Positions 4,514-64,000 of a stretch of DNA of 64,000 nt are shown here, piece after piece. The stretch spans positions 19,543,640 to 19,607,639 of the forward strand of contig NC_068989.1 of assembly GCF_001194135.2 (NCBI RefSeq), read 5' to 3'. The stretch comes from Octopus bimaculoides (lineage: Eukaryota). The notes beneath the pieces are model-generated. The model saw only the letters and a list, made by a program, of their open reading frames with translations. It searched no databases and had not been told where the DNA came from. Position 1 is the stretch's first letter; each line of letters starts with the position of its first letter. Position numbers and translations under genes: made by a program.

Positions 4514-4914
4514 GGCGTAGGAGTGGCTGTGTGGTAAGTGGCTTGCTTACCAACCACATGGTCCAGGGTTCAGTCCCACTGCGTGGCATCTTGGGCAAGT
4601 GTCTTCTACTATAGCCTCGGGCCGACCAAAGCCTTGTGAGTGGATTTGGTAGACGGAAACTGAAAGAAGCCCGTCGTATATATGTATATATATATATGTA
4701 TGTGTGTATGTGTATGTGTTTGTCCCTCCAACATCGCTTGACAACCGATGCTGGTGTGTTTATGTCCCCGTAAGTTAGCGGTTCGGCAAAAAAGATCGAT
4801 AGAATAAGTACTAGGCTTCTAAAGAATAAGTCCTGGGGTCGATTTGCTCGACTAAAGGCGGTGCTCCAGCATGGCCACAGTCAAAAGACTGAAACAAGTA
4901 AAAGAGTAAAAGAG

Positions 4915-38330: not shown

Positions 38331-38402
38331 CATCTGTCGAATCTTCCCGCAAATAGCATATGTTTTGTTTGAACCTGTCATTCTGCCTGTAGTAACATCA
38401 AC
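38331..38402 (-). CDS. RPS21: RPS21 coding exon (72 nt): VDVTTGRMTGSNKTYAICGKIRQM
   Basis: Acceptor ccttttctcag and donor ATG|GTAATA. Matches eS21 [24 protein letters not shown]. Confidence 0.96.
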
Positions 38403-43103: not shown

Positions 43104-43263
43104 CTAGAGACACAAAAAGAAAAAAATATGAAAGCAATGATTATGATCATGTAGATAATTATTTTAGTTTGGAAAGAAAAATTACCATTGCAATTATTAT
43201 ACTAAAAAAAAATTACTTGTAGATACTATTTTATAAACACCATTTAGTGTTTGGAAACAGTTC

Positions 43264-43394
43264 AGATGTATGAACCAGTTGAATATTCAGAAGATTAGAA
43301 ATCTGAGATACATTTTCAACAGTTCAACATTTTATATACCAAAGTTTTGACTCCACTCACAGGTTTTTACCATGAGTCGCAACACCCTTTGGAA
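43264..43394 (-). ncRNA. SNORA13: Box H/ACA snoRNA, SNORA13/snR35-like (18S Psi1248 guide), copy A
   Basis: 5' hairpin ccaaag-ggtgttgc...gtcaaaa-ctttgg, H box ATATAA, 3' hairpin, ACA-tct. The pocket pairs with 18S UUUGAC-Psi-C-AACAC. Confidence 0.85.
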
Positions 43395-44556
43395 AATGAT
43401 CACCATAACTCCAATATCGAAATATGCTAACATTATNNNNNNNNNNNNNNNNNNNNNNNNNNNNNNNNNNNNNNNNNNNNNTTCTTCGCCACATCACCAA
43501 ATGAAATATGCTTATTGGTCGTTGCACCAGAAAATAACGGGGTAATCTTTTGGAATACGTCTTATTATTATCGTCATTTTCCGTGAGCACGTCTTTTTAA
43601 TTGTAAACACTCCCGTTCTGTTTGACGTGTGGAAGAGGACGCTAATGGGTGTGTGTGTGCGAGTTGGTTTTATGTAACCATTTCTTTAAGTGTTATTCTT
43701 TTACTTGTTTCAATCATTTGACTGCGGCCATGTTGGAGCACTGCCTTTAGTCGAAAACATCGACCCCAGGACTTATTCTATCGATCTCTTTGCCGATTCG
43801 CTAAGTTAAGGGGACGTAAACACACCAACATCGATTGTCAAGCGATGGTGGCGGGACAAACAGATACATATAAAACGGGCTTCTTTCAGTTTCCGCCAAC
43901 CAAATCCACACACAAGTTTTAATTGACCGACTTTTTTTCCATGCATGCTGCAATATTTCGGCTCTTCGGTCATTAACAAAAAACCCCACATGGCTTTTTC
44001 GACGTTTATCTCGTTTTCTTCCTGGAAATTTACGGATTTTACATACAGAAATAAAGCAGGTAAGAACAAATATGGGCAATCTTTCGGAATACATCTCATT
44101 AACTTCGTCATTTTCCGTGAGCACGTTGACTTGTCAATTGTAAACATTCGTGTGCGTGCTTATTCTTGTTTGACGTGTTAAAGTGGAAGAGGAAGCTAAT
44201 GGGTGTACGTGTGTGTGTGGAGGAAGCTAATAAGTGTACATATTCCGGTCCTTTCCTCAGAATCATAGAAGTGGCATTAACAATTTCGATAATAATACAA
44301 GGGACGTAACTCTTAAAACAATAAGGAAGATAATATCGCCAAGAAAAATCACACAAAATCAAAATGTTAGAATTCAAGAGAATTCGTATTAGAATTTTGA
44401 AAGTGTGTTTCTAGCATCTCAGGTTTTCTGTTTAGATACTTTTTGCGTCTGTTATTGTGTAATGCTATACGTGCGTGAAACATTAGTAGAGTAAACACTT
44501 TTAATTTCACTTCTTGTCAAATGATGACTGTGGTACGAAGCTATTATATAAAGTGT

Positions 44557-44686
44557 AAATGTGTGAACCAGCAGAATAATCAGAACGTTGGAATTCTGAG
44601 ATTGTTTTCAGCAGTTCAACATTTTCTGTACCAAAGTTTTGACTCCACTCACAGGTTTTTACCATGAGTCGCAACACCCTTTGGAA
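44557..44686 (-). ncRNA. SNORA13: Box H/ACA snoRNA, SNORA13/snR35-like, copy B
   Basis: 5' hairpin identical to copy A, H box ACAGAA, ACA-ttt end. The 3' hairpin has diverged with a compensatory U-A to C-G change. Confidence 0.85.
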
Positions 44687-45985
44687 AACAATCACGAGGA
44701 AACAAAAGCGGCAGTACATCGAACTAGCTGTGCTATATACCTAATCAACCTAATTTTCGTTTTAACGTCCACTTTCCATGCCATATTTTTTTACGACCAG
44801 ATGCCCTCGCCAATCCTCACCTATTCCCAATTTAGGTATTTTCGGTCTACCATATTTTCTCATTGAAGTTTGGAAACGGAGGGTACGACTCCCATGACGT
44901 CCCCCCCCCCACCATTTTAAGGTCCGCCTGAGACTAGGGTGAAAGATACTCGCAGCAGGTGCCACGCAGTAGGACTGAAACCGAAACCACACAGCCTCTC
45001 TAGTTAAAACTAATTTTGTATCTTCTCATTACAGTAAATGTTTTGCTTTGAAGAATAACGATATCTAAAAATATGCAAACTTGTCTCCTGCGTGTTTTGA
45101 ATTCAGGCCTGTTCCAATCGAGCAAACCTATGTGATTAAAGACCTTATTTTTTCAATATTACAGATATCTACTACTACTTTATACAAGTTTTATTTGTAT
45201 TTAAAATGGTAGGGTGTGATTTGGGTACTATTTTTAGCAGATCTAGAGACCACACTTACAGGTCTCGGGGTGTGTCATCGCTGCTTTCTGAAGAAAAGTA
45301 TGAAGTGAGAGTAACTAGGGATCGAAAATTGTATGTGGAATAAAACCGAGCATTCCTGATGTGAAAGGGATAAAAGAATTAAGAGCAAAGTGATCATATT
45401 TTGACGCTTATTCAGTCGCCTTGTACATGAATGAAATAAATGTTTCTACTTTAAGGCACAAGGCCTGAAATTTTGGGGGAGGGGGCCATTCGATTACATC
45501 GACTCCAGTGCGAAACTGGTACTTGATTTATCGACTCCAGCGGCATTTGAACTCAGAACGTAAAGACAGATGAAATACCGATATGCATTTCGCCCGGCGT
45601 GCTAATGATTCTGCCAGTTCGCCGCAGAATGAAATAAGGGTAAGATAAAAACAAAAACACGAATAAAAATTGCAAATCTTCGTTTCTACATGAATGACAA
45701 ACTTTCCCGAGAAAAATAAATAGGATATGGTAACTTTTATGCTAGTTACAAAAAAAAAAAGTTAAAGAGCTTATGAAAAGCCTTAGCGATCTTTCGTTTA
45801 GAGAACCTTAAATTTAGGATTGTAAATGAAAGGAAACTAAGCCAAAAACGTAGTACAAGATCTCCCGTGTATAATACAGGACTATTACAAGATACACACC
45901 AGAGGTATATAATAAAGTAGGCAAAAATAATTTCAAAATATAATTGAGAAAAAGAAAACGTGTAAACCACGTGTGTGGAGCATAC

Positions 45986-46035
45986 CATTTCCTTGGGATA
46001 TACATATCCACGAATTCACCTGCTTCGTTCTGCAT
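45986..46035 (-). CDS. RPS21: RPS21 first coding exon (50 coding nt; exon starts at 46063): MQNEAGEFVDMYIPRK(C)
   Basis: Unmistakable eS21 N-terminus. Donor TG|GTATGC; upstream acceptor ttactattgcag at 46064-46065. Confidence 0.97.
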
Positions 46036-46201: not shown

Positions 46202-49200
46202 AACACGAGATTTCGGGTAAATTATAACGAGAATCACGTTGTCCTCTCGTTCAGTATTTTTTTTTACGGGGGAGAATAAAAAGAATTAAAAAGGTTTCCT
46301 TTCATAAATGTAATTTTAATTGTTAAAATAACTATTATTTCTAAATATGAATTAGCTTAACGATTAAATACATATGTTTATTTTATGAATTAAAAAAAAA
46401 TTCATACATCTGTAAGAGTGCAGACGCACACCTCTTCCTGTAATACCGCAAAAATAAAACCGGAGATCGTCTCATCTCGTTCCTTTCTAATTCTTCCAAA
46501 TCCCAAATCTGTTCAACCCCATGTCTTTGCGCCAATTATCTACAAATATTCTCGGTTGAGGATTTGTAATACAAACGAATAACCTCAGTCGCTAGTCACA
46601 GAACAAGGTGATTGCTTATAATAGTGCTTTAAACCTGTGCACATGGCCGTAAAGGCATACATATGCAATGTACATTTCCGACTTTGTTTCCTTTAACTTT
46701 GAATACTTTCTAATGAAATAATCACAAATTTATTTCTGTTGATGTAGATTACAGTTATATCAGAATTTGTTGTGAAAATTGTTTGGGAGGTGGGGATAAG
46801 AGTTTCGCATAATTCACACGCCTCACCCTTGATTTCTCATGTTTTGATGTAAACTGCAATCACGGAAAAAAATAAATTGAGGATTCTTTCTCCTTTTCCC
46901 TTTTGGAATTTGTTAAATGAATTATCAGTATCTCTACCGCCATTCATGCCAGTTTTCAAAATACAAGGTCAAATTTACCACAGAATAAGTTTCGTTGTAT
47001 AATACAGATGAAAATATTCCTAAATATGCTCAAGTTTAAATTATTCATGATTTAAATGACCAAATTAATATCAGAAATAGATTTCCCGCAAGAAAATTAG
47101 GCGGAGGTAAAGAATACGTACACCACCCGTTTTCGGCATAATCCTCACCCTAAACACCGGGTGTGCATATTCTTCGCCACATTACCAAATAAAATATGCT
47201 TATTAGTCGTTGCACCAGAAAATAACGGGCTAATCTTTTGGAATACGTCTCAGACTTATCTTCGTCATTTTCCCTAACACTAATTTAAATTATGTACTTT
47301 TGTTAATAAAATATAATTTAGATCAATAAATGATAGGTCATTCTAGTTTTCAATAAAATGAAATGTTTCAGCTGCTAATTTTTGTTTCCATAAATTATGC
47401 TGGTATCTCTGGAAAATTTCATATTATTAAAAAGATATTCATTTGACAAGTTCCAGGTGGAATACTCCTCAAAAGTATATATTATTCAACACTACTAGAA
47501 TCTACATCGCAAAAACATATGAAGAAACAAAGTCGGGATGCATGAAATATCTGCCCCTCTCCATTTTTTTTTCACATTAAATTTCGGTGTAACCTTAATG
47601 CACACTATCTGAAAGACATTTGTAGAAAATGAAAAACCGATTTTTCTGAAAGTTATGAGGTGGAGTCGAGGCTGTGGTAAGTTTGCTTCCCAACTACATG
47701 GTTCCGAGTTCAGTTCCTCTGTGTGATATGTTGAACGTGTTTTCTATAGCCTCCAACCAACCAAAGCTGTGTCAGTGGATTTGGTTGATGGAAACTGAAA
47801 GGAGCCTGTCATATACATGTCTATGATTGTGCCCCACCACTGCTTGACAACTGGTGTTGGTGTGTTTATGTCTTTGTAACAATGGTTTGGCAAAAGAGAC
47901 CAATAGAATAAGTACCAAGCTTAAAAAGATAAGTACTGGGGCCAATTTGTTCAACTAAAATTCTTCAAGGTGGTGCCCCAGCATGGCTTCAGCCTTTTGA
48001 CTAAAGCAATTGCAAAGATAAAGAAAATCGCAGCATGTGAATTATCCAAAAACTTATCTCAACACCTCCTGATGAAACAATTTTCACTAAATCCGATATA
48101 GTTGTAATCTATACCATGTGAAACTCGTATAAAATTTCATTAAAATAACATCCCCTTTTCAGAAAGTTTTGAGGAAACAAATTCAGGCAGGAGACACATT
48201 TGCATAGTTATAACTGCATGGAAATTAGGGGAAGGGGTTATATAGGCACCAGTGCTGAACTGGAACTCATTTTATTGACCCCGAAGGAATGAAGGGAAAA
48301 GTTGACCTTGGTGAGATTTGGTCTCAGAAAGTAAAAAGTTGGAATAAATACCATAAAGCATTTTGTTTGACAGTAATGTTTCAGTCAAGCCACCACTTTT
48401 ACTAATAATAACAGTTTCTTAATTAGGCACAAAGCCTACAATTTTGAAAGAGGGATCTTGATACAATTGATCCCAGTGCTTAAGTGGTACTTTTCTATTT
48501 CATTGATGCCGGAGGGGTTGTCCTTAGTGGAATTTCAATTCAAAATGTAAAGAGCTGGAACAATTATTGCATAGCATTTTTTTCCTAATGTTTTCACAAT
48601 TCTGCTCACTGCCTTAAAATAATTTCTAATTGAGGTATAAGGTCAACAATTTTGAGGGGAGATCTTGAAAGGAATGAAAGGCAGAGTTGACCTCAGCAAG
48701 ATTTTAATTCAGAATGCTACCTTAATAATAATTATGCACCAGTGACAGGTAAAAGGCACCTGTACTTGTGACACGTAAATGGGCACCAGTGTTGGTGATG
48801 TAAAAGACACCCAGTACACTGTAAAGTACTTGATGTTAGGAAGAGCATCCAGCTGTAGAAACCACGTCAAAGAAAATACAAGCCTGGTACAGCTCTAGTC
48901 AAACTGTCTACCCAGCATGGAAAATGGATATTAAATGATAATGATTTAAGGTTATGCACCAACACATAAGTGAGGGCTTGGTTGCAGTATAACTTGATTC
49001 ACCAACTACTGGCATGGGTTGTACGGTTTGACCAGAGCTGGCAAGCTGGGGAGTTGTTCCAGGTTCTAGTCCTATTTGGCTTGGTTTCTATGGCTGGATG
49101 CCACTTCTTAATGCCAACCACTTTACAGTGTGTACTGGGTGCTTTTAACATGGCACCACATGTGTGTTTTTACATGATACCAACATGAGTGCTTTTTATG

Positions 49201-53300: not shown

Positions 53301-54656
53301 TCATCATCATCATCATGTAATGTCCATATCCCATGCTGGCATAAATTGGACAGTTTGACAGGATCCAATAGATCCAAGGACTGCATTATGCTCCACTGTC
53401 TACTTTGGCATGGTTTCTTCAGCTGGATGTTCTTCCTAATCCCAACCATTTTACAACATGTACTGAATGCTATTTCAGCTCAACCATCACTAGTGAGGTT
53501 GTCATGCAGCTTGCAAGACCATGAATCCTAAGAGATGAAAGATTAAATTATAAGAGAAGGGACCAGAGCAGAACAGTTTTCTTGATGTAAAGGAGCTACA
53601 TGGTTAATCACATTTTAGAAGACAGAGTTGGGGTGATCAGGATGGAGCTGGGAAGAGATAAAAAGCAGTAGTGAAGAGATGTCAGGGTGACTCTCAAGGA
53701 AGAAGGGGAGTAAAGTGAGGTGGGCCACATCAACATGTAAAATGTCACCAATTGATTAGAAGAATCACAGAGCTGACAGTGAAATATGAAATAATTAGAC
53801 TGAAGAATTTGGAAATCTACATAATGTATGATGTAATCTATTATGATTGGATTAAATAAAATTTCTAACAAAACAATTGTCACAAATTTAAACTCTATTT
53901 GTTCATTTCTTTATTATATATATACTATATATGTATGTATGTATCATCATCATCATCATTATCATCATCGTTTAACGTCCGCTTTCCATGCTAGCATGGG
54001 TTGGACGATTTGACTGAGGACTAGTGAAACCGGATGGCAACACCAAGCTCCAATCTAATTTGGCAGAGTTTCTACAGCTGGATGCCCTTCCTAACGCCAA
54101 CCACTCCAAGAGTGTAGTGGGTGCTTTTACGTGTCACCTGCACGAGGGCCAGTCAGGCGGTACTGGCAACGGCCATGCTCAAAATGGTGTCTTTTATGTA
54201 CCACCCGCACAAGAGCCAGTCCAGGGGCACTGGCAACGATCTCGCTCGAAAATCCTATGAAGGCCAGTCACTCTTTTACTTGTTTCAGTCATTTGCCTGT
54301 GGCCATGCTGGAGCACCGCCTTTTAGTCGAGCAAATCGACCCCAGGACTTATTCTTTGTAAGCCTAGTACTTATTGTATCAGTCTCTTTTGCCGAACCGC
54401 TAAGTTACGGGGGCATAAACACACCAGCATCGGTTGTCAAGTGATGTTGGAGGGGACACAGACACATACACATATAAATATATATACATATATACGACGG
54501 GCTTTTTTCAGCTTCTGTCTACCAAATCCACTCACAAGGCTTTGGTCAGCCTGAGGCTATAGTAGAAGACACTTGCCCAAGGTGCCACACAGTGGGACTG
54601 AATGTGGAACCATGTGGTTCATAAGCAAGCTACTTACCACACAGCCACTCCTATGC

Positions 54657-62247: not shown

Positions 62248-64000
62248 CTCTTTTACTCTTTAACTTGTTTCAGTCATTTGACTGCAGCCATGCTGGAGCA
62301 CCGCCTTTAGTCGAGCAAATAGACCCCAGGACTTATTCTTTGTAAGCCTAGNNNNNNNNNNNNNNNNNNNNNNNNNNNNNNNNNNNNNNNNNNNNNNNNN
62401 NNNNNNNNNNNNNNNNNNNNNNNNNNNNNNNNNNNNNNNNNNNNNNNNNNNNNNNNNNNNNNNNNNNNNNNNNNNNNNNNNNNNNNNNNNNNNNNNNNNN
62501 NNNNNNNNNNNNNNNNNNNNNNNNNNNNNNNNNNNNNNNNNNNNNNNNNNNNNNNNNNNNNNNNNNNNNNNNNNNNNNNNNNNNNNNNNNNNNNNNNNNN
62601 NNNNNNNNNNNNNNNNNNNNNNNNNNNNNNNNNNNNNNNNNNNNNNNNNNNNNNNNNNNNNNNNNNNNNNNNNNNNNNNNNNNNNNNNNNNNNNNNNNNN
62701 NNNNNNNNNNNNNNNNNNNNNNNNNNNNNNNNNNNNNNNNNNNNNNNNNNNNNNNNNNNNNNNNNNNNNNNNNNNNNNNNNNNNNNNNNNNNNNNNNNNA
62801 TACATATATACAATGGGTTTCTTTCAGTTTCCGTCTACCAAATCCACTCACAAGGCTTTGGTCGGCCCGAGGCTATAGTAGAAGACACTTGCCCAAGGTG
62901 CCACGCAGTATATAAAATATACACACACACAATTGAGCTTCACACAGCTTCTGTTTAATAAAATCCTTTCATAAGTCATTATATGTTGATGATGATGATG
63001 ATGACAATGACAATGATGATGATAATTATGATGATTGCATACATCTCATCTCAAGGGCATACATATGTATGTCTGAGTGTGTATTTGTCTGTATGCGTGC
63101 GAATGCATATAGGATAAAATGTTATAATGGGTACACCCAATGCTGTTGTTTAACTCTGAGTTACATAGTGTTAAGTAGATGCGAGATGAAAACAGGATGT
63201 CAGAATGTCACAGGTAACATTTCTGGAAGATCTGCTACATATGCCACGCAATGAGGTATGTACAATGAAGTTCAGGACATATATACACACTGATATATAC
63301 ATATGTATGTATGTATGTATGTATATGCATGTACACACACATACACACATGTAGAAAAGAGCATACGCAAATGCACAAACTTTAAAAAACGTATATATTC
63401 AGAAACATACAATTGACAACACATATCCACATACATACACACATACAAATGAGAGCACACATACTCAGAAAGATACACACACATATACACATATCCTCAT
63501 CCAATACACACACACACACACACACACACTCACACACCAACACAGAAAAAAAAAAAAAAAAAAAAAAAATTAAAAACATACACACACCCACATGCAAATG
63601 CACATGTACAAATACACACACACAAACACACATGAGAACACTCACCCACACACTGATGAAAAGACACACATACTGAAACAGAGATACTCAGCCACTCTAA
63701 CAGTTATGTCTCTATACACATACATACACATTTCAGCCACGCACATGCAAGTTGTCTACTCCAATCTGAAAACTCTATCTAGGAGTTAACCTTTCACTCT
63801 AACTAGTACTTGAGTTCAGATATAGTGTCCTTATCTGATATAAGTCAAATATGTGGTGGTGGGGGTGATGGAGAGGATGGTGGCAGCAATGGGGTTATCT
63901 GCATGGTCATGTGATATATGGTATCCCTAATGTACTGCAAGTTAAGTCACTGGGGCTATATTGCTTTATAATAGTGCTTCTCATAGAATGATGCAGGCCT

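What the first reader, a model, noticed from the sequence alone, without database searches (positions are those of the whole stretch)
43264..44686. Two SNORA13/snR35-like snoRNAs in one RPS21 intron, guiding the m1acp3-Psi site of 18S
Seen: the copies are about 1.29 kb apart in intron 2. The 54-nt 5' hairpin is identical while the 3' hairpin diverges, with a compensatory change. H boxes are ATATAA and ACAGAA, and both end ACA+3. Pocket gtgtt / gtcaaa pairs UUUGAC-Psi-C-AACAC at 14 nt from the H box. Established knowledge: this uridine (human 1248, yeast 1191) becomes m1acp3-Psi near the P site, guided by SNORA13/snR35. As I recall, the human host is a lncRNA rather than RPS21. Inference: host switch plus duplication, with selection concentrated on the 5' hairpin.
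Basis: partly seen in the sequence, partly recalled or inferred. Interest (0 to 1): 0.7.

Follow-up and report, generated by a model that had tools for sequence, protein, structure and literature searches.

The report
Two SNORA13-like snoRNAs in octopus RPS21
Intron 2 of the Octopus bimaculoides ribosomal protein S21 gene holds two conserved copies of a small guide RNA whose pocket matches the 18S rRNA uridine that becomes the hypermodified base at the ribosome's P site. This is a sound but ordinary unannotated member of a well-known RNA class.

Summary
The window is Octopus bimaculoides and RPS21 lies on the minus strand. Intron 2 (45985-43104) holds two box H/ACA units: copy B at 44686-44557 and copy A at 43394-43264.

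- **Conservation:** the 54-nt 5' hairpin is identical in both copies and in their orthologues in O. sinensis and O. vulgaris. The paralogues differ at 0 of 56 positions there, against 15 of 73 in the rest.
- **3' hairpin:** it diverges in sequence but keeps its pairing, with three pairs changed on both sides.
- **Guide:** GUGUU and GUCAAA flank U-C of the 18S sequence UUUGAC-U-C-AACAC, and GUCAAA starts 14 nt before the H box. This is the geometry of the Rfam SNORA13 and TtnuHACA21 consensus sequences.
- **Rfam:** scores are far below threshold (SNORA13 19.9 against 53 bits). I therefore call the pair a functional equivalent and likely orthologue, not a member by Rfam's cut-off.
- **Assembly gap:** the N gap is intronic, 42 nt upstream of copy A, and its flanks are collinear with both other species.
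- **Host:** no such snoRNA was found in RPS21 of four other molluscs, and the human host is the lncRNA EPB41L4A-AS1, so host relocation is supported.
- **Extra finding:** introns 3 and 4 each carry a copy of a second, snR85-like H/ACA snoRNA aimed at the uridine 10 nt upstream.

Expression and genome-wide copy number could not be tested. This is a new member of a known kind, of modest interest.

The parts
44557..44686 (-). Copy B (upstream in the intron), a SNORA13/snR35-like box H/ACA snoRNA of about 130 nt
   Evidence: It folds as hairpin, hinge, hairpin, tail with MFE -36.4 kcal/mol and z = -3.2. Rfam gives TtnuHACA21 25.0 bits and SNORA13 19.9 bits, both full-length. Orthologues are L002:11358-11490 and L003:11423-11555.
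43264..43394 (-). Copy A (downstream in the intron), a SNORA13/snR35-like box H/ACA snoRNA of about 131 nt
   Evidence: It folds the same way with MFE -36.6 kcal/mol and z = -4.6. Rfam gives TtnuHACA21 24.4 bits. Orthologues are L002:12843-12974 and L003:13003-13134.
44631..44684 (-). 5' hairpin of copy B. It has lower stem CCAAAG/CUUUGG, a pseudouridylation pocket, and a 9-bp upper stem.
   Evidence: It is identical in all six sequences. Guide elements GUGUU (44677-44673) and GUCAAA (44643-44638) lie in the pocket.
43339..43392 (-). 5' hairpin of copy A, with guide elements GUGUU (43385-43381) and GUCAAA (43351-43346)
   Evidence: It is identical to copy B and to the orthologues. GUCAAA starts 14 nt before the H box.
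44624..44629 (-). H box ACAGAA of copy B (fits ANANNA)
   Evidence: Read directly from the sequence. It is conserved in the B orthologues.
43332..43337 (-). H box AUAUAA of copy A (fits ANANNA)
   Evidence: Read directly from the sequence. It is conserved in the A orthologues.
43271..43326 (-). 3' hairpin of copy A, a nearly continuous stem without a canonical two-sided pocket
   Evidence: Fold. Pairs at alignment columns 71/128, 78/120 and 87/113 changed on both sides and kept pairing.
44564..44618 (-). 3' hairpin of copy B
   Evidence: Same structure as in copy A, with copy-specific compensatory changes.
43267..43269 (-). ACA box of copy A. The predicted 3' end is 3 nt downstream, at 43264.
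   Evidence: Sequence. Similarity between the paralogues ends here.
44560..44562 (-). ACA box of copy B. The predicted 3' end is at 44557.
   Evidence: Sequence. Similarity between the paralogues ends here.
43104..45985 (-). RPS21 intron 2, which hosts both copies. It is 2882 nt as written, including 45 N.
   Evidence: Exon 2 is 46063-45986 with donor GTATGC. Exon 3 is 43103-43040, preceded by ...TCTCTAG. The spliced protein is 100% identical to Octopus eS21 (P0001).
43437..43481 (.). Assembly gap inside the intron, between the copies and 42 nt upstream of copy A
   Evidence: Located. Its flanks are collinear with O. sinensis and O. vulgaris, and the missing stretch is the continuation of a dispersed repeat.

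Best explanation
These are two paralogous box H/ACA snoRNA genes. They are the octopus functional equivalent, and probably the orthologue, of human SNORA13 (ACA13) and yeast snR35.

**Shown by the sequence**
- Both lie in sense orientation in intron 2 of the TOP-promoter gene RPS21.
- Each has the hairpin, H box, hairpin, ACA layout.
- The 5' hairpin carries a pocket whose strands, GUGUU and GUCAAA, can pair with 18S 5'-UUUGAC-3' and 5'-AACAC-3'. This leaves U-C unpaired at the top of the pocket, 14 nt from the H box.

**Inferred from established H/ACA biology**
- Dyskerin, NHP2, NOP10 and NAF1 (later GAR1) would assemble on each unit as the intron is transcribed.
- After splicing and debranching the intron would be trimmed to the two RNPs.
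- In the nucleolus, dyskerin would convert the helix-31 loop uridine (human U1248, yeast U1191) to pseudouridine.

The 3' hairpin has no usable pocket. It most likely serves only as the second protein-binding module, which explains why its pairing is kept while its sequence drifts.

The duplication happened at the DNA level and is older than the split of O. bimaculoides from O. vulgaris and O. sinensis. Both copies have stayed under purifying selection. Releasing two snoRNAs from one intron needs either a cut between them or some transcripts yielding only one.
For: **Architecture and stability**
- Both copies fold into hairpin, hinge, hairpin, tail with z-scores of -4.6 and -3.2. No shuffle of 200 folds as well.

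**Structure under selection**
- 99% of cells pair, three pairs changed on both sides, and no pair survives sliding the partner by 1 to 3 columns.

**Purifying selection on the guide hairpin**
- Only 1 of 56 columns of the 5' hairpin region varies across six sequences, and that column lies just outside the stem. In the rest, 23 of 75 columns vary (p = 7e-6).
- Orthologues show 0 or 1 change in 56 nt there against 7 or 8 in 73-75 nt in the rest.
- The surrounding intron is about 80-90% identical over long stretches between species.
- Similarity between the paralogues starts about 10 nt before the first stem and stops at the ACA box. The flanks are unrelated.

**Guide**
- The same GUGUUGC ... GUCAAA(A) elements, in the same positions, appear in the Rfam SNORA13 and TtnuHACA21 consensus sequences. 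Both are aligned full-length to the copies.
- The target oligonucleotide GACUCAACACG and the roles of snR35 and ACA13 are given in PMC3045603.
- SNORA13 as homologue of snR35, guiding position 1248, is stated in PMC12975130.

**Host**
- The spliced product is 100% identical over the 81 residues spliced to the 83-aa Octopus eS21, P0001.
- The window is 100% identical to the O. bimaculoides locus L001.

**Not a local repeat**
- Only these two copies occur in the 64-kb window and in about 28 kb around RPS21 in each of two other species.
Against: - No Rfam family reaches its gathering score.
- In E-value mode the hits are weak: SNORA13 19.9 bits against 53 with E = 2.5, for copy B only, and TtnuHACA21 about 25 bits against 100 with E of 0.3 to 0.4.
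- The 5' hairpin never varies, so it offers no covariation. Its structure rests on thermodynamics and on analogy.
- Only three closely related species could be compared.
- No expression data, no pseudouridine mapping and no octopus 18S sequence were available.
- The full target string UUUGACUCAACAC is partly from my own knowledge. The paper quoted gives GACUCAACACG.
- Guide pairing is only 6 + 5 bp.
- Genome-wide copy number is unknown.
Confidence: 0.8

Rival explanations
1. Only one copy is a working snoRNA gene. The other is a redundant duplicate that is not processed or is on its way to decay.
For: - The two copies carry the same guide, so one would be enough.
- In vertebrates an intron usually yields one snoRNA.
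- The hinge and 3' hairpin differ at 15 of 73 positions.
- The MFE stem of copy B's 3' hairpin has more mismatches and a weaker z-score, -2.8 against -4.1.
Against: - In all three species both copies keep an invariant 5' hairpin, an intact ANANNA H box and an ACA box.
- Each copy has its own compensatory change in the 3' hairpin.
- The intron around them is only about 80-90% identical between species. A dead copy should have picked up about 5 changes in the 56-nt hairpin.
Confidence: 0.1
2. The main stable product is a single RNA of about 1.4 kb capped at both ends by the two H/ACA RNPs. This would be an H/ACA-ended sno-lncRNA like human SLERT, in place of or alongside two free snoRNAs.
For: - Two H/ACA units sit in one intron in the same orientation, about 1.16 kb apart.
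- From my own knowledge, this is the arrangement that yields sno-lncRNAs and SLERT in human cells, because exonucleases stop at the two RNPs.
Against: - The spacer is not specially conserved.
- It varies in length between species (copy start-to-start spacing 1292, 1485 and 1580 nt).
- It is largely made of dispersed-repeat fragments.
- No expression data are available.
Confidence: 0.1
3. The identity of the two 5' hairpins comes from gene conversion between the copies, not from selection on each one.
For: A 60-nt run is identical between paralogues whose other halves differ by about 20%.
Against: - Orthologue comparisons also show 0 or 1 change in 56 nt in the 5' hairpin, for both A and B, across species whose introns differ by 10-20%. 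This needs purifying selection whether or not conversion also occurs.
- In the 3' half each copy groups with its own orthologues, so there has been no recent conversion there.
Confidence: 0.1
4. The blocks are not snoRNAs. They are a conserved intronic structure acting in cis on RPS21 splicing, or fragments of a mobile element.
For: - Rfam scores are below threshold.
- The intron does hold several dispersed repeats.
Against: - The complete H/ACA layout, with boxes at the right distances, occurs twice.
- The guide matches a site known to be pseudouridylated by this class.
- There are no further copies in about 120 kb examined.
- The same gene carries a second, unrelated H/ACA family in introns 3 and 4.
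Confidence: 0.03

Closest known systems
Human SNORA13 (ACA13; Rfam RF00396)
   Same: - It is a box H/ACA snoRNA of about 130 nt.
- The guide lies in the 5' hairpin, with pocket strands GUGUUGC and GUCAAA(A).
- GUCAAA starts 14 nt before the H box (consensus).
- Its target is the 18S uridine that becomes m1acp3-Psi.
   Different: - The Rfam score is 19.9 bits against a gathering score of 53, and the stems are unrelated in sequence.
- The human host is intron 1 of the lncRNA EPB41L4A-AS1. Here it is intron 2 of the protein-coding gene RPS21.
- Human SNORA13 is one snoRNA in its host intron. Here two copies share one intron.
Yeast snR35
   Same: It is the H/ACA guide for Psi1191, the first step of the m1acp3-Psi pathway (PMC3045603).
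   Different: - From my own knowledge, snR35 is an independently transcribed, longer gene, not an intronic one.
- No separate Rfam hit to snR35 was listed here.
Tetrahymena TtnuHACA21 (Rfam RF02328)
   Same: - It is the best-scoring Rfam family for both copies, at 25.0 and 24.4 bits, full length.
- Its consensus carries the same pocket elements, GUGUUGCC and GGAGUCAAAC.
   Different: - The scores are far below the gathering score of 100.
- It comes from a ciliate, so the match reflects the shared target and architecture, not close descent.
- No paper naming this RNA was found.
Several snoRNAs in one intron (intronic clusters in Drosophila and plants; human SLERT with SNORA5A and SNORA5C)
   Same: More than one H/ACA unit sits in a single intron of a Pol II host gene.
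   Different: - Whether octopus releases two snoRNAs, one snoRNA, or a snoRNA-capped long RNA is unknown.
- The comparison rests on my own knowledge, not on a tool result.

Membership tests
Box H/ACA snoRNA (class) | Hairpin, hinge, hairpin, tail secondary structure | tested here: met
   MFE and centroid folds of both copies show it, with z = -4.6 and -3.2. The consensus fold of six sequences agrees. 99% of cells pair.
Box H/ACA snoRNA (class) | H box ANANNA in the single-stranded hinge | tested here: met
   AUAUAA in copy A and ACAGAA in copy B. Each is conserved in its orthologues.
Box H/ACA snoRNA (class) | ACA box 3 nt from the mature 3' end | tested here: inconclusive
   ACA follows the 3' hairpin directly in all six sequences, and similarity between the paralogues ends there. 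The mature 3' end cannot be determined without RNA data.
Box H/ACA snoRNA (class) | Pocket with two-part complementarity to a target, leaving U-N unpaired 14-16 nt from the H or ACA box | tested here: met
   GUGUU and GUCAAA pair with AACAC and UUUGAC, leaving U-C unpaired. GUCAAA starts 14 nt before the H box. The target sequence comes from PMC3045603 and from general knowledge. The octopus 18S itself was not examined.
Box H/ACA snoRNA (class) | Stable RNA bound by dyskerin, NHP2, NOP10 and GAR1 | not testable with these tools
   No expression or RNP data are available.
SNORA13 (Rfam RF00396, clan CL00028) | Covariance-model score at or above the curated gathering score of 53 bits | tested here: not met
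   No hit at gathering. Copy B scores 19.9 bits with E = 2.5, and copy A is not listed for this family.
SNORA13 (Rfam RF00396, clan CL00028) | 5'-hairpin guide for 18S U1248 (yeast U1191), with the family's pocket sequences and spacing | tested here: met
   The alignment to the SNORA13 consensus puts GUGUUGC and GUCAAAA on the same model positions. The spacing to the H box is 14 nt in both.
SNORA13 (Rfam RF00396, clan CL00028) | Descent from the same ancestral gene (orthology) | tested here: inconclusive
   Outside the guide, no sequence similarity supports or contradicts it. The host gene differs from the human one. No intermediate taxa could be reached.
H/ACA-ended sno-lncRNA (SLERT-like) | Two snoRNA units in one intron | tested here: met
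   Both copies lie in RPS21 intron 2 in the same orientation.
H/ACA-ended sno-lncRNA (SLERT-like) | Accumulation of the RNA between the two units | not testable with these tools
   No RNA data. The spacer is poorly conserved and rich in repeats.

The most novel reading that the evidence does not exclude
Because the two H/ACA units share one intron, RPS21 intron 2 may give rise to a stable nucleolar RNA of about 1.4 kb, capped by an H/ACA RNP at each end like human SLERT. That would tie a snoRNA-ended long RNA to the output of a ribosomal protein gene in a cephalopod. More broadly, octopus RPS21 would be a single transcription unit supplying four H/ACA guides for two uridines 10 nt apart in the P-site loop of 18S rRNA.
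Probability: 0.1. Interest if true: 0.55.

Novelty: new member of a known kind. Interest (0 to 1): 0.3.

Why it matters
The m1acp3-Psi residue sits beside the P-site tRNA and is the most elaborate rRNA modification in eukaryotes. Its guide is known in yeast and in vertebrates. I found no paper describing snoRNAs of cephalopods, and Rfam at its curated thresholds reports nothing in this window, so threshold-based annotation would miss these genes.

The locus gives a clean example of several known behaviours of snoRNAs:
- A guide changes host gene while keeping its pocket exactly.
- A duplicate is kept in the same intron.
- The guide hairpin is frozen while the second hairpin evolves by compensatory change.

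It also provides copy-specific sequences for testing how two snoRNAs are released from one intron in a lophotrochozoan. None of this overturns current understanding.

Tried and rejected
- **Rfam at gathering thresholds, whole window:** nothing found.
- **Metagenome scan for close relatives:** a 30-base pattern covering the lower stem and pocket gave 0 hits.
- **Looser metagenome scan:** a 21-base pocket plus H-box pattern gave 7 loci. Only one (L011, 13.8 bits, E = 0.5) looks like an H/ACA unit, and its organism is unknown. It adds nothing about cephalopods.
- **RPS21 loci of Babylonia, Haliotis, Pecten and Liolophura:** neither model R1 nor the pocket patterns found a counterpart. A pattern match at Haliotis L005:11018-11106 was rejected. 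It lies in a short tandem repeat 2.4 kb past the gene, has no second hairpin or ACA, and has no Rfam support.
- **Repeat at 43482-43664 and 44010-44230:** it has weak snoR12 hits and I considered it as a C/D snoRNA. I rejected this because its boxes deviate (UGACGA, CUGG). A third copy lies upstream of the RPS21 promoter at 47170-47273, so it is a dispersed repeat.
- **Conservation profile of the intron:** the three octopus species are too close for it to single out the snoRNAs on its own. Background identity is about 80-95%.
- **Literature:** no paper was found on cephalopod snoRNAs or on TtnuHACA21.
- **Other cephalopods:** squid, cuttlefish and Nautilus genomes could not be reached with the collections on hand.
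Full report
**Where the window comes from and what the host gene is**

A tblastn of human RPS21 finds four coding segments on the minus strand. Reading the splice sites gives these features:
- exon 2 at 46063-45986, with the ATG at 46035;
- exon 3 at 43103-43040;
- later coding exons ending at 38331 and 37803;
- a non-coding exon 1 at about 46201-46170. It starts with the pyrimidine tract CCTCTTCCTTTTC and ends at a GTAAGT donor.

The spliced product of 81 residues is 100% identical to the 83-aa eS21 protein of Octopus, P0001. The protein's genomic loci were fetched from three assemblies. The window is 100% identical to L001, which is O. bimaculoides GCA_001194135.2. The intron in question runs from 45985 to 43104 and is indeed intron 2.

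**Checking the observation**

Both units are on the minus strand, which is the sense strand of RPS21. Copy B is at 44686-44557 and copy A at 43394-43264.

A 42-nt core of the 5' hairpin occurs exactly twice in the window, with none expected by chance. The repeat finder reports a 91-nt pair at 95% identity, 1292 nt apart.

The 54-nt 5' hairpin is identical in the two copies. The H boxes are AUAUAA and ACAGAA, and an ACA follows each 3' hairpin. GUCAAA begins 14 nt before the H box in both.

**The assembly gap**

The N run 43437-43481 lies in the intron, 42 nt upstream of the first base of copy A. It touches neither copy. Its flanks align collinearly with O. sinensis and O. vulgaris. In O. vulgaris the missing stretch is about 72 nt and continues a dispersed repeat that also occurs at 47170-47273.

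The gap therefore affects only the exact spacing. The spacing is 1292 nt as written, against 1485 nt in O. sinensis and 1580 nt in O. vulgaris. Most of that difference comes from indels elsewhere in the spacer.

**Is it a structured RNA under selection?**

Each copy folds into two hairpins separated by a hinge. The free energies are -36.6 and -36.4 kcal/mol, z-scores are -4.6 and -3.2, and no shuffle of 200 does as well.

Both copies sit at orthologous positions in O. sinensis (L002) and O. vulgaris (L003), so the duplication predates the split of these species.

Across the six sequences, only 1 of 56 columns of the 5' hairpin region varies, and that column lies just outside the stem. In the hinge, 3' hairpin and tail, 23 of 75 columns vary (p = 7e-6). 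Within O. bimaculoides the paralogues differ at 0 of 56 against 15 of 73 positions (p = 1.3e-4).

Orthologue pairs show the same contrast: 0 or 1 change in 56 nt against 7 or 8 in 73-75 nt. The surrounding intron is only about 80-90% identical over long stretches between species. Purifying selection on the 5' hairpin is therefore needed even if gene conversion also occurs.

On a structure that leaves out pairs inside the pocket and pairs involving the ACA box, 99% of cells pair. Three pairs of the 3' hairpin changed on both sides: U-A to C-G twice, independently, and U-A to A-U. Sliding the partners by 1 to 3 columns removes all of this signal.

Similarity between the paralogues starts about 10 nt before the first stem and ends at the ACA box. 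The flanks are unrelated. The conserved unit is thus exactly the predicted RNA.

**What it guides**

The pocket of the 5' hairpin has GGUGUUGC on its 5' strand and GGAGUCAAAA on its 3' strand. GUCAAA pairs with 5'-UUUGAC-3' and GUGUU pairs with 5'-AACAC-3'. This leaves U-C unpaired at the top of the pocket.

That is the helix-31 loop of 18S rRNA, called loop 35 in the yeast papers. PMC3045603 uses the oligonucleotide GACUCAACACG for this site. It states that pseudouridylation of U1191 needs snR35 in yeast and ACA13 in humans, and that N1-methylation and acp addition follow. PMC12975130 confirms that SNORA13 is the snR35 homologue guiding position 1248.

In E-value mode, Rfam aligns both copies full-length to Tetrahymena TtnuHACA21 (25.0 and 24.4 bits). 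It aligns copy B to SNORA13 (19.9 bits). In each alignment the matched letters are the guide elements GUGUUGC and GUCAAA(A), at the same model positions. In the SNORA13 consensus GUCAAA also starts 14 nt before the H box.

These scores are far below the curated thresholds of 100 and 53, and nothing passes at gathering. I therefore keep two claims apart. 'Works like SNORA13/snR35' is well supported. 'Is a member of RF00396' fails Rfam's own threshold test.

**The 3' hairpin**

It is an almost continuous stem with a small asymmetric internal loop. I see no two-sided pocket at the right distance from the ACA box. It probably serves only as the second protein-binding module. That fits its pattern of drifting sequence with preserved pairing.

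**Host relocation**

The human gene sits in intron 1 of the lncRNA EPB41L4A-AS1. I fetched the RPS21 loci of four other molluscs:
- a neogastropod, Babylonia;
- an abalone, Haliotis;
- a scallop, Pecten;
- a chiton, Liolophura.

I searched them with a covariance model built from the six octopus sequences (model R1) and with pocket patterns. No counterpart was found. One pattern match in Haliotis was a chance hit inside a tandem repeat.

The RPS21 association is therefore not general to molluscs. How far back it goes within cephalopods could not be determined, because no squid or Nautilus sequence could be reached and two metagenome scans gave nothing useful.

**How it most likely works**

The sequence shows two sense-oriented H/ACA units in an intron of a TOP-promoter ribosomal protein gene, each with the m1acp3-Psi-site guide.

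The remaining steps are inferred from established H/ACA biology:
- co-transcriptional RNP assembly;
- release by splicing, debranching and trimming;
- isomerisation of the loop uridine by dyskerin in the nucleolus;
- N1-methylation by EMG1/Nep1 and acp addition by TSR3.

Two units in one intron require either a cut in the 1.16-kb spacer or a snoRNA-capped long RNA as a by-product. The spacer is repeat-rich, varies in length and is not specially conserved. This argues against a sequence-specific role for it.

**Something else in the same gene**

A k-mer scan for runs identical in all three species and a weak BLAST hit led to two more H/ACA units. One is in intron 3 at about 38669-38538. The other is in intron 4 at about 38221-38092.

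They are paralogues of each other, at 82% identity, with nearly identical 3' hairpins and ACA tails. The intron-3 copy folds as a textbook H/ACA RNA.

The 5' pocket of the intron-3 copy carries UUGUCAAAUUCC and AGCC. GUCAAAUU pairs with 18S AAUUUGAC and GCC pairs with GGC. This leaves U-U unpaired, with the target uridine 10 nt upstream of the m1acp3-Psi site. GCC starts 14 nt before the H box.

The Rfam snR85 consensus carries the same elements, UAUGUCAAAUUCC and GAGCC. It gives a weak hit on the intron-4 copy, 17.9 bits against a gathering score of 37. From memory, snR85 guides yeast Psi1181, equivalent to human Psi1238.

Octopus RPS21 thus appears to host four H/ACA units aimed at two uridines 10 nt apart in the same rRNA segment.

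**Verdict**

It is an unannotated octopus counterpart of a well-known guide RNA. Its features are all known from other lineages: a ribosomal protein host, a lineage-specific host change, duplication, and more than one unit per intron. It is a new member of a known kind, and interest is modest.

Noticed in passing
window 38669-38538 (-) in RPS21 intron 3, and 38221-38092 (-) in intron 4: A second pair of paralogous box H/ACA snoRNA candidates, one per intron. The 5' pocket of the intron-3 copy (UUGUCAAAUUCC / AGCC) matches the Rfam snR85 consensus pocket. The intron-4 copy gives a weak snR85 hit of 17.9 bits. The predicted target is the 18S uridine 10 nt upstream of the m1acp3-Psi site. In O. 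bimaculoides the intron-4 copy has GUCAAAUU changed to AUCAAAUU. The target of their well-formed 3' pocket (AAAACU / CAAGCA) was not identified.
   Followed up: partly
window 38223-38119 (-): The 5' hairpin of the intron-4 unit shares the lower stem CCAAAG/CUUUGG and part of the 3' pocket strand with the SNORA13-like copies. It scores 18-19 bits with model R1 in all three species. This may be deep paralogy among all four units or it may be chance.
   Followed up: partly
window 43482-43664, 44010-44230 and 47170-47273: A low-copy dispersed repeat with core GGAAAATGACGA...GTATTCCAAAAGATTA...TTTTCTGGTGCAACGAC occurs twice between the two snoRNA copies and once upstream of the RPS21 promoter. The assembly gap interrupts one copy. 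Weak snoR12 (C/D) hits fall on it, but its boxes are not canonical.
   Followed up: partly
window 43693-43916: A dispersed repeat inside intron 2 has at least seven related copies elsewhere in the window, for example at 4633-4909, 54272-54538 and 62253-62339. It is probably a transposable-element fragment.
   Followed up: no
window 46241-46161: An 81-nt block is identical in three Octopus species. It covers the RPS21 core promoter, the predicted 5'TOP start (CCTCTTCCTTTTC) and the exon 1 donor site.
   Followed up: no
window 616-539, 2896-2973, 22222-22145, 23970-23896, 54048-54125: Five copies of a short translated motif (LQSDLAEFLQLDALPNANHSESVVGA and variants) appeared as spurious tblastn hits. 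They probably mark a dispersed repeat family with a remnant ORF.
   Followed up: no
L002:24767-28299 and L003:21061-28286; also L003:9030-9374: In O. sinensis and O. vulgaris a gene with a nucleoside-diphosphate-kinase domain follows RPS21. In O. vulgaris a small Pif1-2B-domain ORF lies just upstream, probably a Helitron-type remnant.
   Followed up: no
window 44979-45036 (-): A weak snoZ157 C/D-box hit (22.7 bits against a gathering score of 55) lies in intron 2, upstream of copy B. It has no convincing C or D boxes and is probably chance.
   Followed up: no
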